From: Vitrella brassicaformis CCMP3155
Taxonomy: Eukaryota > Protista > Chromerida
DNA: 64,000 bases
Assembly: GCA_001179505.1 (NCBI GenBank)
Contig: CDMY01000434.1
Coordinates: forward strand, 13,243-77,242
Direction of reading: 5' to 3'
The notes below the pieces were generated by a model, which ran no database searches, was not told the DNA's origin, and worked only from the letters and a program-made list of their open reading frames with translations. Within the stretch, counting starts at the first letter, position 1. Each line of letters opens with the position of its first letter. Of this stretch, positions 16,494 through 21,716 are shown one piece after another. The translations under genes and the position numbers were made by a program.

Positions 16494-17195
16494 CACACAC
16501 ACACAAGGCCACTGACAAGAGTATGACAACGTTCGGGCATCTCGCGTGGTCAGGTACTGGCAAACTCCTGTAGAGTCTGTCGGGCTCTGTGCAGTCCTTC
16601 TGCCACATCGCCCTCAGCGACGCCCCTCTTGAGGAAGTGCACGGCGTTCTTGATCTTGGACACCACCATGTTGTTCGAGGCACGCAGCCTATCGAAGCTC
16701 CTGCGGTCCGACTTAAGGATCTTCCCTGCCATGGGTCAGAAGCAGTCAGGGCAGCGACGCGAGAGGCAGTGGTTTGTGTACCGAATTGGTCTTTGGTGTG
16801 TTTGTCCATGCGGTTCGACGACATGATGTCGCTGAGCCCCTCTGATGTGTCCTTGTTGAGTGCTTTGGTCCTCTTCATGTTGGCCTCCAGCTTATGCTGG
16901 ATGCTCTCCAGCTTCGTCACCATCGCCTCGGCCTGCGTGCACCGCAGCGGCGTGGGTGAGGAGGAGAGTTGACGCACGTGTGGCCCTCTTACCTCTTTCT
17001 TGTCTGCGGCTCTGTCCTTGGTCTGCGCCTTCGGCCCTCCATCGTGATGGATCTGCCCGAGACTCGACGCTGCTGAACCGAACCACAAGCTGGGTTAATG
17101 CATGCAAACTGAAAGATTTCTTCTCACGTGCTACCTGCTTGGCCTCCCACAACCAGCCATGAGGCCAGCAGCACCGAGAACGAAAGGAAAACCAT
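16442..17195 (-). CDS. Small (166 aa) putative secreted coiled-coil protein, unknown function
   Basis: Five exons (17195-17128, 17089-16993, 16932-16782, 16725-16558, 16458-16442) sum to 501 nt in frame with GT-AG sites; signal-peptide-like start MVFLSFSVLLASWLVVGGQA. Confidence 0.65.
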
Positions 17196-17305
17196 TGGGA
17201 GACCTCCCGTATTTACAGCCTCCTGATGAGTTTTTCGCCCTGCCCTAAACACAATAACCAAAACCAAAACAGAGCGTTAGCCTGTGATATCGCAAGCAGA
17301 CAGAT

Positions 17306-17994
17306 ATGGTAAGTCGAGGGTGGCAACAGGGCATCGGGTTCACAGGCAGATCACTCAGGGCAACAAGCCAGACGTGACGTGGGAGTGGCAGAGTGTCCGC
17401 GTGGGATCTCATCTCACGGTGGCTGTTTGGCGTCGTGTTTCTGGCTGTATGTGGTTGACTTGACTGACACAGGCGCGTGGAGCGAGCGGCAGTCAGGCAG
17501 CGACTTCAGCCAGCAGCGGCAAGGGCGGTCCAGCCACCACCATCGGAGGACAGCGCACCACGCTCGCACGGTACACAAACAGACAGACTCGGACACACAC
17601 ACACAGCAAGACAACACGGATAGCGGCGGACACACGAGGAGGGAGGCGATGTTCATCTTTCTGGTCTCCTTGTCCCGTGTTGTGTTGGTGTGGGTGTAAT
17701 GTCACTCACAGGCGCAACGTAGGTCGTTCGTCTGCTGTGGCGCCGAGCAGCAAGGGCCGCGGCGCCTCGTCCCAGGGCATCCTGCGGTTCTACACCGATG
17801 ACGCACCGGGACTCAAAGTGTATGCGACCACAGCGAACGAACGCCCTCCACGCGATTCTGGGTTGGTTGATGTGTTTGTTGTATTGCTCAGTGGTCCGAC
17901 GACCGTATTGGTGTTGTCGTTGGTGTTCATGGCGATCGTGGTTATCTTGCACATCATGGGCAAGACGCGAGCTGGCAGATACGAATCCGCCTAG
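17306..17994 (+). CDS. SEC61B: Protein translocon subunit Sec61-beta (103 aa)
   Basis: Exons 17306-17308, 17473-17570, 17712-17819, 17892-17994 give ...GQRTTLARR...[41 protein letters not shown], the Sec61-beta signature plus tail anchor. Confidence 0.95.
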
Positions 17995-18192
17995 AGGGAG
18001 GGAAGGGAACGAACCGCCACCCCAATACACACAAACGGCGGGAGAGGGGGAGGAGCGAAGGAGGGAGAGGTGGCGGGGGGAGAAGCAATAGTATCCCGAT
18101 CGCACGATGGGTGCGTCCGTGTGCTCAGTTGCACACCGCGCCCCGTCGGCTCTCTTGGCGTTGCGTGCTTGTGCGATGTGATGTTTAATTAG

Positions 18193-18492
18193 NNNNNNNN
18201 NNNNNNNNNNNNNNNNNNNNNNNNNNNNNNNNNNNNNNNNNNNNNNNNNNNNNNNNNNNNNNNNNNNNNNNNNNNNNNNNNNNNNNNNNNNNNNNNNNNN
18301 NNNNNNNNNNNNNNNNNNNNNNNNNNNNNNNNNNNNNNNNNNNNNNNNNNNNNNNNNNNNNNNNNNNNNNNNNNNNNNNNNNNNNNNNNNNNNNNNNNNN
18401 NNNNNNNNNNNNNNNNNNNNNNNNNNNNNNNNNNNNNNNNNNNNNNNNNNNNNNNNNNNNNNNNNNNNNNNNNNNNNNNNNNNNNNNNNNNN
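18193..18492. other. Scaffold gap (300 N) between the convergent 3' ends of SEC61B and MGMT
   Basis: N run. Confidence 0.99.
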
Positions 18493-19016
18493 GGGGGGGG
18501 TGCGTGTGAGCATAATTCACTGACGGACTCTGCATTGCATGGAGGGGGGAGGGGAGGGGAGGGGCGGGGGGGTGGGAGGGAGGGATGATCCACGCACATG
18601 TGCCCATGGCGCCTGTGTCACAACATAGACAGCCAGATCGATGGGTGGCTGTGGCTCTCTGGATTTTTGAATGGACCTTCCTTGCATTCCTTCCATGGTG
18701 TGTCGCTCGTCGTTTCAATTCAATGAATCAATCAGTTGACGGCCTCAAAAACGTCTGTCTGTCTTCACAATGAAGGGTCTGTCTATACAGTACAGCCGCA
18801 CGAGCCTCGCCTCGCCTCGCCTCCTCTCTCGCATGCTTATCAGCCCATCACCAGATGCTCGCACGCATCCTTGCGGCGATGAGCATCACACGCGCGCAAG
18901 ATGAAGCAACCAGGCAGAGGCACCGCAGCAGGCAGGCAGGCAGGCAGCACACATCCACCCACTCGAAAACGTGCTGATGCCATGCCGCACATCACATTCC
19001 CCTCCTCTAGTCTAGC

Positions 19017-19812
19017 CTAGCCGTTCTTCTGTCTCTTCTTGGGCACATCATCGTTGCCATGGTTGCCTAGGGAAAGCTGGCGCTTGTCCCCTGCCCTCAC
19101 ACCCGGCTGCCTGTCCTGCTCTTGTCTGTGGTCCTCCAGGGCGGTCTTGCCTGATCCGAGGTCGAAGAGGAACTCTTTTGGAATCCTGCTGTCGCGACTG
19201 CCCGGCGCCTTGTTGACCGTGACGCCCTCCTGCTGCAGTCGCCTGACCTTGTCAGGCAGATTGGGATTGTCGGGACCTGAACGGCCACCTGCAGACAACA
19301 GCCAGAGGTGAGGTGATCCAGGCAGGCAGGCAGGCAGGCAGGCCGGCAAGCGTTCCTCTTCCCCACCGAAGCCGCCGATGGTGAGGTCAGCGTTGACGAC
19401 CCTGTGTCAGGGAACCGCCGGGGCGAACGGGTTTCTCTTCATCGCTGCACCACAACACAGGTACCTCACGAGCACAGGACACAGAGATCCATCCCACCCA
19501 TCCCCACTTCCACACATCCATCCCATCCCCCCAGTGCACCGCACCCACCTTACCTTGTCCAATAGCCTGGCCAGATCCACAGCCAACCGCCTCGCCCAGT
19601 GCCTTGTAGGTCGTCACCTTCCCCGCAGGCACACGCATCAGCGCCTCAAACACGCGCCGCTGGAATGGCGTGATGCGATGCGCAGACCAGTCAATAACAC
19701 CTGGCGCACCATCGCCCTCATCCTCTGCTGCTATAGCCGCAGCGCTCGAGTGGCCGCCAGGCCCATCCTCAGCCTCCCCGGCCTCATCGTGGCCATCTGC
19801 ACTGCGGCTCAT
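19017..19812 (-). CDS. MGMT: O6-alkylguanine-DNA alkyltransferase (MGMT/Ogt C-terminal domain) with an in-frame TGA at the catalytic Cys; candidate selenoprotein
   Basis: Exons 19812-19554, 19444-19367, 19288-19017 (609 nt): ITPFQRRVFEALMRVPAGKVTTYKALGEAVGCGSGQAIGQAMKRNPFAPAVP[TGA]HRVVNADLTIGGFGGRSGPDNPNLPDKVRRLQQEGV. The canonical motif is PCHRV. Confidence 0.9.
19407..19409 (-). other. Putative selenocysteine UGA codon at the alkyl-acceptor position
   Basis: CCC TGA CAC AGG GTC GTC = P-*-H-R-V-V on the minus strand; no SECIS confirmed. Confidence 0.6.
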
Positions 19813-20135
19813 GCTGTGCGGTGGCAGATCTAGACCGACTCCCAGACGGCGTGTTGGGACTGGAGGTAGGCGCGCTCCTGTGAGCTGTAGACGAGGAGGG
19901 CGACGTGGAAACAGCACAGGTGCGAGCAGAGATGGATGGTGACGCCGAAAGCAGAGACGAGGAGGATGATTCTGAGCCAAATTGGCATAGGCTGGCCCAC
20001 GGAGCAGTGATGCCAGCCTTGTGCTTCGAGCATAAAGATGCCACGATCTTGGTAGGGCATAGCGTGAAACCGCCTCCCAGCTCGCAACACTAAGGCAGCC
20101 TCAGACAAGCGAGCCGGCCGTTTGTGCACCTAACG

Positions 20136-21716
20136 ATGGCGACAGAGTCAGCTGAGCCCTCCACTTTGACCAACGGCGCGAAGGCTGCGGACGCAGATCC
20201 CTCCCAGGCAGCCGTCACGACCCAGGAGGAGCTGGACGAGAAGGTCAAGGCACTCGCAGAGGAGGTCAAGGTCAGCCACCACAACGCACATGTCAACTCG
20301 GGCGGGAGAGAGGCGGGCGATGAGATGAGGCAGCCGGGCACTGCGTGTGTCTCGCACGTGTGACGTGGGAGGGTGGTGGGGCATGGCTGGCGACAGATCT
20401 GCGTGTGTGCGGGTGCGGCCGGTGGGCACACCACACTCTCCCTTTGTGTGTCTGTCTGTGTGTGTGGCTCGTCAGGCGTTGCGCTCCGACTTGAATGACG
20501 TCAAGCAGAAGAGCCTGCGCAGCTCCCGCGAGGTCGGCCAGCTCAAAGTCGTCATCCACGAGCTACACCAGCTACTCACAGTAAGCACAACATACGCCCA
20601 CCCTACACACCACCCACACCACCCGTCCCTCACACCTCTCCTCCCTCTCTGTCGCGCCCTGTGTTGTTGTGTGTGTATCAGGGAAGCGTCCAGGGTCGTT
20701 CGAGTGAGGCAGCTGGGTCGTTGCCAGCTGAGGAGTCGCCCGAAGCGCAGGACCAGCACGACGAGGACGGCCATGGCGGTGAGGGCGGTGGCGGCAACAG
20801 TGGGCGCCGACGGCGGCGAGGTCGCGGCACTGCTCGGCAGGACATTCAGCCCAAGGTCCCCCAAGTGCAGTGGAGGCAAAAGGGACTCGCTCACACGTAA
20901 GCCAAGGGAAGAAAGACGGAGAGATCCGATCCAGGTCGAATGCACTGCCATGTGCCTCCTCGGTTGGACGTGTGTGTACCTGGTGCTCAGTGATGAAGCT
21001 GCCGCCCCCAAGTCTCCCGAGGACGGCACCCCGGCCTCCCAGGCGGCCCGCGGCGACGAGAGCCATGGCGAAACACCCGAAGAGGGCGCCAAGGACGAAA
21101 ACGGTACCCAACAACACAACACAACACAACACTTCGTACCATCACACACATCACCATACCATACCTCCTACGTGTCTTGTCTTGCTGTTTATCAGGTCGG
21201 GGAGACCGTAGCGGCCGCAACCGTCGTCGCCACAACGGACGTCGTGGTGGCAGTGGCGCCAAGGGTGCCGGTGCGGCTGCTGACAAGTCCGCGTCGCCTG
21301 CCAACGCAGCTGGCAAGGGCGGAGCGGGCGGTCGCGCGTCGGGCAGTGCACCCGCCATGACCGACCAGCAGCGGAAGGAGGAAGAGCAACTCAAGTGAGC
21401 AGAGCAGGGCGTGCCATGGGGTGGACGGCCTGTGTATGCCCTTATACTGTCTGAGTATGTGTGTGTGTGTGTGTGTCCATCAGGGAGGTGTTCCGCAATG
21501 CCAACACGCCAGACGAGGTCAAGAACGCCATGCAGCGGGTATGCAACACAGTTACCTGCAAGGGAGAAGCCAATCAGAGAGAGGGTGTGGGGTGTGGCAT
21601 GGTGCAACGCTTGCTTTTAGGCTCGTGAGTTGGATCTGAGTTATTTGGTTGAGTTGGGGGGGAAGAAGCTCAAGAAGGTGGAGGACGCCGCCAGCGCACC
21701 CTCCGGACCCGCATAA
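20136..21716 (+). CDS. Hypothetical protein: N-terminal coiled coil, Arg/Gly-rich low-complexity middle, short helical C-terminal module
   Basis: In-frame spliced exons: MATESAEP...EELDEKVKALAEEVK|ALRSDLNDVKQKSLRSSREVGQLKVVIHELHQLL|...GRGDRSGRNRRRHNGRRGG...|EVFRNANTPDEVKNAMQR|ARELDLSYLVELGGKKLKKVEDAASAPSGPA*. Confidence 0.75.

What the first reader, a model, noticed from the sequence alone, without database searches (positions are those of the whole stretch)
19017..19812. Candidate selenocysteine DNA-repair alkyltransferase: UGA replaces the catalytic Cys of MGMT (PUHRVV)
Seen: the only in-frame stop in the 3-exon gene is TGA 19409-19407, exactly at the Cys of the invariant PCHR motif. Conserved residues continue downstream (HRVV, IGGF.G, K..L..EGV), including across a further canonical intron, and the gene ends at TAG 19017. 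Established: this Cys is the suicidal alkyl acceptor of AGTs, and a TGA aligned to a catalytic Cys is the classic selenoprotein signature. TGA is an ordinary stop in neighbouring genes (YME1, kinase, EIF3L), so the code is not globally reassigned. The NP 'Asn hinge' before the motif favours a true AGT over a PWHR alkyltransferase-like protein. Inference: a Sec-based repair enzyme would spend one selenium per lesion, outside the usual redox role of selenoproteins. I recall Sec forms of this family being predicted in marine microbes/algae but know of no characterised or alveolate example. Caveat: a single TGC/TGT/TGG->TGA error or nonsense allele gives the same picture.
Basis: partly seen in the sequence, partly recalled or inferred. 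Interest (0 to 1): 0.88.

Follow-up and report, generated by a model that had tools for sequence, protein, structure and literature searches.

The report
Selenocysteine DNA-repair alkyltransferase gene in Vitrella
The alga-like protist Vitrella brassicaformis expresses an MGMT-type DNA-repair gene whose catalytic cysteine codon is a UGA served by a selenocysteine-insertion hairpin in the 3'UTR, so it is very probably a selenoprotein that the public annotation hides by skipping the exon. Such selenium forms of this enzyme were already predicted in bacteria and other algae.

Summary
A three-exon gene on the minus strand (19812-19017) encodes a 202-codon MGMT/AGT C-terminal-domain protein. Its only in-frame stop, TGA 19409-19407, falls on the Pfam PF01035 position of the catalytic Cys (context AVP-U-HRVV).

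- **The TGA is real.** It is present without any difference in three independent spliced transcript assemblies, one further RNA contig and DNA contigs of three runs.
- **A SECIS is present.** It has a GUGA...UGAU core, a 12-position helix II, an AAG bulge, a 6-bp mini-stem and a helix I of about 13 bp. A generic SECIS filter hits nothing else in the 64-kb window, and about 0.002 hits are expected by chance in this UTR.
- **The public model is wrong.** CEM12158.1 / A0A0G4FFZ3 (176 aa) skips exon 2 and so lacks the active site.
- **It is not a new kind.** Sec-MGMT was reported in Carboxydothermus (2005), in marine metagenomes (2007-08) and as the algal "MDP" family (2020). Engineered human AGT-U145 is active (2014). 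I also found at least 120 metagenome contigs with TGA at this Cys.

Verdict: a real, expressed, mis-annotated selenoprotein and a new member of a known kind. The genome's Sec machinery and actual selenium incorporation were not tested.

The parts
19813..20052 (-). 5'UTR (minimum extent)
   Evidence: Transcript contig L001 matches the genome up to 20052. The X8 RNA contig reaches 20042.
19554..19812 (-). Exon 1 (ATG 19812-19810). Acidic low-complexity N-terminus, then the start of the MGMT DNA-binding domain, including TTYK (the Tyr114 equivalent) and Gln82 at the arginine-finger position.
19445..19553 (-). Intron 1, 109 nt, GT..AG
   Evidence: Joint 19444/19554 in the X8 RNA contig. It is absent from L001-L003.
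19367..19444 (-). Exon 2 (78 nt): AMKRNPFAPAVP-U-HRVVNADLTIGGF. This is the active-site exon, and the public gene model omits it.
19407..19409 (-). In-frame TGA (codon 99) at the catalytic Cys position; proposed selenocysteine codon. The next base is C.
   Evidence: No differences in RNA or DNA contigs.
19289..19366 (-). Intron 2, 78 nt, GT..AG; contains a (CCTG)n repeat.
   Evidence: The X8 contig skips it (pieces 19284/19363, with a 4-nt ambiguity). It is absent from L001-L003.
19017..19288 (-). Exon 3 coding part. It holds the end of the domain (DKVRRLQQEGV) and a tail of about 65 aa ending in the basic PKKRQK motif. Stop TAG 19019-19017.
18587..19016 (-). 3'UTR (minimum extent, 430 nt). 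All transcript contigs break at the C-rich tract before the N gap.
18823..18906 (-). Type II SECIS element: helix I; core GUGA 18889-18886; helix II; bulge with AA 18872-18871 (AAG); 6-bp mini-stem with 6-nt loop 18864-18859; 3' core UGAU 18842-18839.

Best explanation
This is a genuine nuclear selenoprotein gene of Vitrella brassicaformis. It encodes a single-domain O6-alkylguanine-DNA-alkyltransferase-type protein (MGMT C-terminal domain only). The catalytic cysteine is replaced by selenocysteine, encoded by UGA and recoded through a type II SECIS hairpin about 440 nt downstream in the 3'UTR.

Inferred mechanism: the helix-turn-helix domain binds DNA, and the selenolate of Sec99 takes the alkyl group from the lesion in a single-turnover transfer. 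The selenolate is ionised at physiological pH and held by the conserved Asn91, His100, Arg101 and the Glu of the EGV motif. The product is a Se-alkyl-selenocysteine protein that is then discarded, so one selenium atom is spent per lesion. The basic C-terminal PKKRQK tail, present only if the UGA is decoded, probably directs the full-length protein to the nucleus.

Shown: the gene structure, the TGA in DNA and mRNA, the position of the TGA in the family, conservation after it, and the SECIS-like structure.

Inferred: actual Sec insertion, DNA as the substrate, and nuclear targeting.
For: - **Position of the TGA.** It falls on Pfam PF01035 profile position 52, with the flanks aligned to 1-51 and 53-81. 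Homologues have Cys there.
- **Sequence after the TGA.** HRVVNADLTIGGFGG...DKVRRLQQEGV is 49% identical to the closest Cys homologue P0005 (E 6e-9). The frame stays open for 103 codons across a phase-correct intron.
- **The TGA is real.** The exact CDS with the TGA is in three transcript assemblies from different data sets and one more RNA contig. DNA contigs of three runs show no difference.
- **Expression.** Word depth of the mRNA contig (25.7) is comparable with neighbouring transcripts (33-93) in the same run, so there is no sign of strong nonsense-mediated decay.
- **SECIS.** GUGA/UGAU core, 11 of 12 helix II positions paired after a U.U, an AAG bulge 13 nt after the UGA of the core, a 6-bp mini-stem and a long helix I. 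The unconstrained MFE gives this shape at -43.5 kcal/mol, z = -4.0, with 0 of 200 shuffles as stable.
- **SECIS significance.** A generic SECIS filter finds only this site in both strands of the 64-kb window. It finds 0.64 sites per dinucleotide-shuffled window, which gives about 0.002 expected in this 430-nt UTR.
- **TGA is an ordinary stop nearby.** Two annotated neighbouring genes end in TGA.
- **Sec at this position is natural and recurrent.** At least 120 metagenome contigs carry NPxAPxxP-TGA-HR[VI] with conserved ORFs continuing after the TGA. Published predictions exist for bacteria and algae (PMC1287953, PMC1976440, PMC2398784, PMC7539508).
- **A Sec-AGT works chemically.** Human AGT with U145 protects E. 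coli from MNNG (PMC4150793).
Against: - Rfam's SECIS_1 model gives no hit even at E up to 10. It also gave none on the other eukaryote-like Sec-MGMT loci, so this is weak evidence. SECISearch3 could not be run.
- My SECIS filter was written after I had seen the candidate.
- The genome's Sec machinery (tRNA-Sec, SPS2, PSTK, SepSecS, eEFSec, SBP2) was not tested here. Its presence rests on unverified notes from this scan about other Vitrella selenoproteins and on the known presence of Sec in related alveolates.
- No close orthologue with TGA was found. The nearest relatives all have Cys.
- The arginine finger of canonical AGTs is Gln here, so DNA base flipping may differ.
- There is no protein-level evidence.
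Confidence: 0.85

Rival explanations
1. The TGA is a true premature stop. The gene is a recently inactivated, still transcribed pseudogene or nonsense allele that makes only a 98-aa fragment lacking the active site.
For: A single-base change from TGC, TGT or TGG gives this picture. All closest relatives have Cys. Gene callers on the transcripts stop at 98 aa (P0001).
Against: A canonical-looking SECIS in the 3'UTR is not expected by chance (about 0.002). The downstream domain, frame and splice phase are intact. The TGA is identical in all RNA and DNA data sets, and the mRNA is not depleted relative to its neighbours.
Confidence: 0.06
2. The UGA is read through by a near-cognate standard tRNA (Trp, Cys or Arg) in the leaky UGA-C context. 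That would give an ATL-like PWHRV or an ordinary PCHRV protein, without selenium.
For: The base after the TGA is C, which from general knowledge is the weakest termination context. PWHRV is the motif of alkyltransferase-like proteins (PDB 3gva family hit).
Against: This does not explain the SECIS hairpin. It would give low yield. Sec forms at exactly this position are common elsewhere.
Confidence: 0.05
3. The functional product is the exon-2-skipped isoform of the public annotation (176 aa), and the exon 2 mRNA is a non-productive isoform.
For: The public model CEM12158.1 joins exon 1 to exon 3 in frame.
Against: All four RNA contigs include exon 2, and no exon 1-exon 3 joint was reported. The skipped product lacks the whole active-site loop and half of the PF01035 domain. 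The model looks like an annotation device to avoid the stop.
Confidence: 0.03

Closest known systems
[quoted passage not shown] 2020, BMC Genomics (PMC7539508)
   Same: A eukaryotic MGMT-domain protein predicted to carry Sec, decoded via a 3'UTR SECIS.
   Different: Neither Vitrella nor Chromera occurs in that paper's text, and Vitrella is absent from its species table. That paper gives no biochemical data.
Prokaryotic Sec-containing methylated-DNA-protein-cysteine methyltransferase (Carboxydothermus hydrogenoformans CHY0809, Wu et al. 2005, PMC1287953; Olavius symbiont and GOS metagenomes, PMC1976440 and PMC2398784)
   Same: UGA at the same catalytic Cys of PF01035. In the metagenome clade I retrieved, the protein is also short and single-domain, with NPxAPxVP-U-HRVV.
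   Different: The bacterial forms use a SECIS immediately downstream of the UGA, inside the ORF. An invariant CATCCGGTCGGAT lies 18-30 nt after the TGA in 23 of 23 non-redundant sequences. They form a separate, strongly supported clade.
Human O6-alkylguanine-DNA alkyltransferase (MGMT/AGT) and archaeal OGTs (PDB 4zyd, 1mgt, 1sfe)
   Same: The C-terminal domain fold family. The Tyr114, Asn137, His146, Arg147 and Glu172 equivalents are all present.
   Different: The nucleophile is Sec rather than Cys. There is no N-terminal domain. The arginine finger (Arg128) is Gln. There is an extra acidic N-terminus and a basic C-terminal tail.
Engineered human AGT C145U (Haruna et al. 2014, NAR, PMC4150793)
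   Same: Sec at the alkyl-acceptor position. That protein was shown to protect cells from MNNG.
   Different: It is artificial: an amber codon with an EF-Tu-dependent system in E. coli. The Vitrella gene would be a natural counterpart using UGA and a SECIS.
Alkyltransferase-like proteins (ATL; S. pombe Atl1, PDB 3gva)
   Same: Single-domain, lacking the N-terminal domain. A weak sequence hit was found.
   Different: ATLs have Trp or Ala in place of Cys and keep the Arg finger. Here the codon is UGA with a SECIS and the finger is Gln.

Membership tests
Eukaryotic selenoprotein | In-frame UGA aligned to a conserved Cys of homologues | tested here: met
   The TGA is at PF01035 profile position 52. 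141 of the 153 sequences in the family search set have Cys there.
Eukaryotic selenoprotein | Sequence conservation and an open frame continuing downstream of the UGA | tested here: met
   103 further codons. The HRVV...GGF.G...K..L..EGV stretch aligns to P0005 (E 6e-9) and to Pfam positions 53-81.
Eukaryotic selenoprotein | SECIS element in the 3'UTR: [A/G]UGA...AA...GA kink-turn core, helix I, helix II and an apical AAR | tested here: met
   Type II structure at 18906-18823. It is the only hit of a generic filter in the window, with about 0.002 expected by chance and z = -4.0. Caveats: there is no Rfam SECIS_1 hit and SECISearch3 was not available.
Eukaryotic selenoprotein | The organism has the Sec machinery (tRNA-Sec, SPS2, PSTK, SepSecS, eEFSec, SBP2) | not testable with these tools
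   Only the window is readable. There is no tRNA in it. Other notes of this scan report several Vitrella selenoproteins, but these are unverified leads.
Eukaryotic selenoprotein | Selenium in the protein (75Se labelling or mass spectrometry) | not testable with these tools
   An experiment is needed.
O6-alkylguanine-DNA alkyltransferase (AGT/MGMT/Ogt) | PF01035 / TIGR00589 C-terminal domain | tested here: met
   Pfam gives E 8e-13 for the N piece alone. NCBIfam TIGR00589 gives 41.7 bits for the truncated piece, against a cut-off of 46.4 for a whole protein.
O6-alkylguanine-DNA alkyltransferase (AGT/MGMT/Ogt) | P-C-H-R-V active-site motif with a nucleophilic acceptor | tested here: met
   P-U-H-R-V: the acceptor is Sec instead of Cys. 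U145 human AGT is active (PMC4150793).
O6-alkylguanine-DNA alkyltransferase (AGT/MGMT/Ogt) | Asn hinge (hAGT Asn137), Tyr114 and Glu172 equivalents | tested here: met
   N91 in RNP, Y69 in TTYK and E in QQEGV, each aligned to family-invariant columns.
O6-alkylguanine-DNA alkyltransferase (AGT/MGMT/Ogt) | Arginine finger (hAGT Arg128) for base flipping | tested here: not met
   Gln82 aligns with the Arg of SsOGT. At this position, 74 of 122 close Cys homologues have Gln and 40 have Arg. This is therefore a subfamily trait and not a defect of this gene.
O6-alkylguanine-DNA alkyltransferase (AGT/MGMT/Ogt) | N-terminal domain (Methyltransf_1N) | tested here: not met
   Only a low-complexity N-terminus of about 45 aa; there is no Pfam hit there. 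The closest homologues (112-165 aa) lack it too.
O6-alkylguanine-DNA alkyltransferase (AGT/MGMT/Ogt) | Stoichiometric alkyl transfer from O6-alkylguanine in DNA | not testable with these tools
   A biochemical assay is needed.
Alkyltransferase-like protein (ATL) | Trp or Ala replaces the Cys (PWHRV), with no transfer activity | tested here: not met
   The codon is TGA with a SECIS, not TGG. TGA is an ordinary stop in neighbouring genes.

The most novel reading that the evidence does not exclude
Vitrella's gene may belong to an unrecognised eukaryotic lineage of selenium-dependent alkyltransferases. That lineage would also include the two-selenocysteine MGMT-DUF3253 fusion proteins I found in metagenomes. 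An AU test does not reject one clade, and the constrained tree is even better by 10 lnL. Together with the Gln-for-Arg finger, this could mean that a selenolate acceptor was selected for a distinct substrate range or for faster kinetics. Selenium would then be spent stoichiometrically, a non-redox use of Sec that has never been characterised in a natural protein.
Probability: 0.3. Interest if true: 0.65.

Novelty: new member of a known kind. Interest (0 to 1): 0.45.

Why it matters
- **Annotation.** It corrects a public gene model (A0A0G4FFZ3 / CEM12158.1) that deletes the active-site exon.
- **Range of the family.** It adds a chromerid, and probably the first documented alveolate, example to the rare Sec-alkyltransferase family.
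- **An expressed natural candidate.** It provides an expressed Sec-alkyltransferase gene with a defined SECIS.
- **An open question.** AGTs are suicide proteins, so a Sec form consumes one selenium atom per repaired lesion. This is unlike the catalytic redox use of nearly all selenoproteins. No natural Sec-AGT has been studied biochemically as far as I could find. Only an engineered human U145 enzyme has been, and it was active and no longer needed Asn137 (PMC4150793). The Vitrella gene could be used to ask what advantage selenium gives here.

Tried and rejected
- **Rfam scans for SECIS.** I scanned 17000-20500 and 18800-18930 at E up to 10, and the whole window at gathering thresholds. There were no SECIS hits. 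The same scan found none on four other eukaryote-like Sec-MGMT loci, so I treat it as uninformative.
- **First SECIS scan.** It demanded at least 4 Watson-Crick pairs directly next to the core and missed the element, because helix II starts with a U.U. A tolerant scan found it.
- **Bridging the N gap.** I searched the metagenome and transcriptome collection for the 39 nt just before the gap and found nothing. This turned out to be unnecessary.
- **Word-indexed homology searches.** Searches with exon 1 and with residues 44-98 gave only 4 and 1 hits and no Sec-truncated relatives. The exhaustive HMMER search gave only Cys forms among the 150 best.
- **Trees.** The 142-row tree is unresolved around Vitrella. 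The AU test on it did not finish in two 300-s runs. A 39-row version finished and does not decide between one and two eukaryotic origins.
- **Other checks.** ARAGORN found no tRNA in the window. The bacterial promoter and terminator scan is irrelevant here. Literature searches for Vitrella or Chromera with selenoprotein or selenocysteine found nothing pertinent.
- **Global TGA reassignment (TGA = Trp giving PWHRV).** Considered and rejected on the basis of annotated TGA stops next door and the SECIS.

Full report
**1. What is in the sequence**

On the minus strand there is a three-exon gene:
- exon 1, 19812-19554;
- intron 1, 109 nt, GT..AG;
- exon 2, 19444-19367;
- intron 2, 78 nt, GT..AG;
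- exon 3, 19288-19017, ending in TAG.

The joined CDS is 609 nt, or 202 codons. It has exactly one internal stop, TGA at 19409-19407 (codon 99), in the context NPFAPAVP-TGA-HRVVNADLTIGGFGG.

**2. Is the TGA real and is the model right?**

Laying public contigs on 17700-20200 gave no base difference in any of four runs. An RNA contig of 1114 nt (run X8) is spliced exactly as modelled: it shows the joint 19444/19554 and skips 19285-19362, which is the second intron within a 4-nt ambiguity.

A word-indexed protein search returned a 98-aa ORF, P0001, that stops at this TGA. It is encoded on three transcript contigs from different data sets: Logan ERR558152, JGI 3300017297 and Logan SRR646408. Each contains the exact 609-nt CDS including the TGA, 186-240 nt of 5'UTR and 422-430 nt of 3'UTR.

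So the TGA is not an assembly error, and the mRNA carries exon 2. The word depth of the mRNA contig (25.7) is similar to neighbouring transcripts in the same run (33-93), which gives no hint of strong nonsense-mediated decay.

The organism is Vitrella brassicaformis CCMP3155. The cluster of P0001 also holds the public protein CEM12158.1 / A0A0G4FFZ3 (176 aa), on contig CDMY01000434.1 of GCA_001179505.1. That model joins exon 1 directly to exon 3 and deletes the 26 codons of exon 2, including the active site.

**3. Where the TGA falls in the family**

Pfam PF01035 (6-O-methylguanine DNA methyltransferase, DNA-binding domain) matches the N-terminal piece at profile positions 1-51 (E 8e-13). It matches the piece after the TGA at positions 53-81. 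The TGA is therefore position 52, the alkyl-acceptor Cys. NCBIfam gives the ogt superfamily.

An exhaustive HMMER search found 1710 relatives at E up to 0.001. In the search set (the best 150 plus P0002-P0004), 141 of 153 sequences have Cys at this position, and none of the others ends exactly at the site.

The post-TGA piece is 49% identical to the closest Cys homologue, P0005, over HRVV...GGFGG...LL..EGV (E 6e-9).

Alignment with solved OGTs (4zyd, 1mgt, 1sfe) shows the equivalents of Tyr114 (Y69), Asn137 (N91), His146, Arg147 and the Glu of EGV.

The arginine finger (hAGT Arg128) is Gln82. This is a subfamily trait: at that position 74 of 122 close Cys homologues have Gln and 40 have Arg.

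There is no N-terminal AGT domain. The protein has an acidic low-complexity N-terminus and a tail ending in PKKRQKNG. That tail looks like a classical nuclear localisation signal (inference) and exists only if the UGA is decoded.

**4. The SECIS**

Rfam gave nothing, and my first, over-strict scan missed it. A tolerant scan of the full transcript found one outstanding candidate at 3'UTR +128. In window coordinates it reads as follows:
- helix I from about 18906;
- core GUGA at 18889-18886;
- a U.U followed by 11 consecutive pairs (helix II);
- a 5' bulge, CAAG, with the unpaired AA at 18872-18871;
- a 6-bp mini-stem with a 6-nt loop (18864-18859);
- 3' core UGAU at 18842-18839;
- the other strand of helix I, down to about 18823.

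This is the textbook type II SECIS architecture (my knowledge of the Walczak/Krol and Grundner-Culemann models). An unconstrained fold of 18908-18822 gives this shape as the MFE, at -43.5 kcal/mol and 46% of the ensemble. The z-score is -4.0, and 0 of 200 shuffles fold as well.

I then applied a generic filter. It requires:
- [AG]UGA, with AA 10-14 nt after it;
- a GA partner;
- at least 8 pairs in helix II with at most 1 mismatch;
- a flank duplex of -6 kcal/mol or better.

It finds this site and nothing else on either strand of the 64-kb window. Twenty-five dinucleotide shuffles of the window give a mean of 0.64 sites, which is about 0.002 expected in a 430-nt UTR.

Caveats: the filter was written after I had seen the candidate; SECISearch3 is not available here; and Rfam SECIS_1 scores it below about 9 bits. 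Rfam also failed on four other eukaryote-like Sec-MGMT loci.

The SECIS lies about 440 nt after the UGA. It is well inside the sequenced UTR, so the gap does not need to be closed for this question.

**5. Is TGA an ordinary stop here?**

In the public annotation of the same contig, 2 of the 6 neighbouring genes (an SNF2-family gene and a 157-aa gene) end in TGA. The MGMT gene itself ends in TAG.

**6. Sec forms elsewhere**

I scanned the metagenome collection with a degenerate DNA pattern for N-P-x-A-P-x-x-P-TGA-H-R-[VI]. I expected only a few chance matches.

All 120 show the MGMT domain in frame on both sides of the TGA. Most belong to a clade of about 106-aa proteins on long, mostly sediment-derived contigs, presumably prokaryotic. 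It forms a 100%-supported clade. It also has an invariant 13-nt stretch, CATCCGGTCGGAT, 18-30 nt after the TGA in 23 of 23 non-redundant sequences. That fits a bacterial SECIS inside the ORF.

Five contigs (L078, L087, L088/L094, L109) are different. In them the MGMT domain with U is fused to a DUF3253 domain (Pfam E 3e-16) that carries a second in-frame TGA at its conserved CPSE cysteine. AUGA-type SECIS-like elements lie after the final stop.

**7. Relationships**

The trees are poorly resolved, because the alignment has only about 110 columns.
- In the free trees Vitrella sits among Cys forms from diverse protists and metagenomes: choanoflagellates, a euglenid and Platysulcus.
- An AU test does not reject Vitrella plus the eukaryote-like Sec fusions as one clade (p = 0.70). 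The constrained tree was 10 lnL better than the quick free tree.

So there are at least two origins of Sec in the family, one prokaryotic and one eukaryotic. Whether Vitrella's is a third cannot be said.

**8. What is known**

- Wu et al. 2005 reported a Sec-containing methylated-DNA-protein-cysteine methyltransferase in Carboxydothermus hydrogenoformans (PMC1287953).
- The family is listed in the Olavius symbiont and GOS selenoproteomes (PMC1976440 and PMC2398784) and in a 2026 review (PMC13188914).
- Jiang et al. 2020 list an algal 'MDP' selenoprotein family (PMC7539508). Neither Vitrella nor Chromera occurs in that paper's text, and Vitrella is absent from its species table.
- Searches for Vitrella or Chromera with selenoprotein or selenocysteine found nothing relevant.
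- Haruna et al. 2014 showed that human AGT with Sec145 protects E. coli against MNNG, and that the Sec form, unlike the Cys form, tolerates N137A (PMC4150793).

**9. Verdict**

This is very probably (about 0.85) a genuine, expressed selenoprotein of the AGT family that the public annotation hides.

The mechanism, single-turnover alkyl transfer to a selenolate, is inferred from the family and from the engineered human enzyme. DNA as the substrate is somewhat less certain, because of the Gln finger and the missing N-terminal domain.

It is a new member of a known, so far only predicted, kind. The interest is moderate: a useful annotation correction and a good natural candidate for biochemistry, but not a new principle.

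The Sec machinery of the genome and selenium in the protein remain untested here. Other notes of this scan reporting Vitrella selenoproteins are leads only.

Noticed in passing
L004-L123 (metagenome contigs), e.g. L005:361-422:-: At least 120 metagenome contigs, mostly from sediment, encode a single-domain MGMT-like protein of about 106 aa with TGA at the catalytic Cys. In 23 of 23 non-redundant sequences, a 13-nt stretch CATCCGGTCGGAT lying 18-30 nt after the TGA is invariant even at synonymous sites. That fits a bacterial SECIS. The prokaryotic Sec-MGMT clade seems far more abundant than the 1-2 sequences counted in the 2007-08 surveys.
   Followed up: partly
L109:11634-12306:+, L078, L087, L088, L094: Eukaryote-like contigs encode an MGMT domain (U at the catalytic Cys) fused to a DUF3253 domain that has a second in-frame TGA at its conserved CPSE cysteine. 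AUGA-type SECIS-like hairpins follow the final stop. This is a candidate two-selenocysteine fusion protein. No paper in the library mentions DUF3253.
   Followed up: partly
window 19367-19444 versus public protein CEM12158.1 / A0A0G4FFZ3 (P0157): The public gene model skips exon 2 in frame. The database protein therefore lacks the active-site loop and half of the PF01035 domain.
   Followed up: yes
window 19567-19569 (Gln82 codon): The arginine finger of canonical AGTs is Gln in Vitrella and in about 60% of the closest Cys homologues (motif C.S.QA[VI]GQA). These include choanoflagellate proteins. It appears to be an uncharacterised single-domain MGMT-like subfamily.
   Followed up: partly
window 19312-19355 and 18928-18948; 18510-18585: (CCTG)n tetranucleotide repeats lie in intron 2 and in the 3'UTR, and a long C-rich tract lies just before the N gap. 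All contigs of all runs break or branch at these places, which is probably why the assembly has the gap.
   Followed up: no
window 17700-18120 (+ strand): A convergent neighbour gene with Pfam family Sec61_beta in the public annotation has a 72-nt GT..AG intron (17820-17891) confirmed by an RNA contig. Its 3' end faces the MGMT 3'UTR across the gap.
   Followed up: no
window 18510-20100 (runs X10, X14-X20): Marine sediment and microbial-mat metagenome runs hold 7-46% of the 31-mers of this Vitrella locus. This suggests that Vitrella or a very close relative is present in those environmental samples.
   Followed up: no
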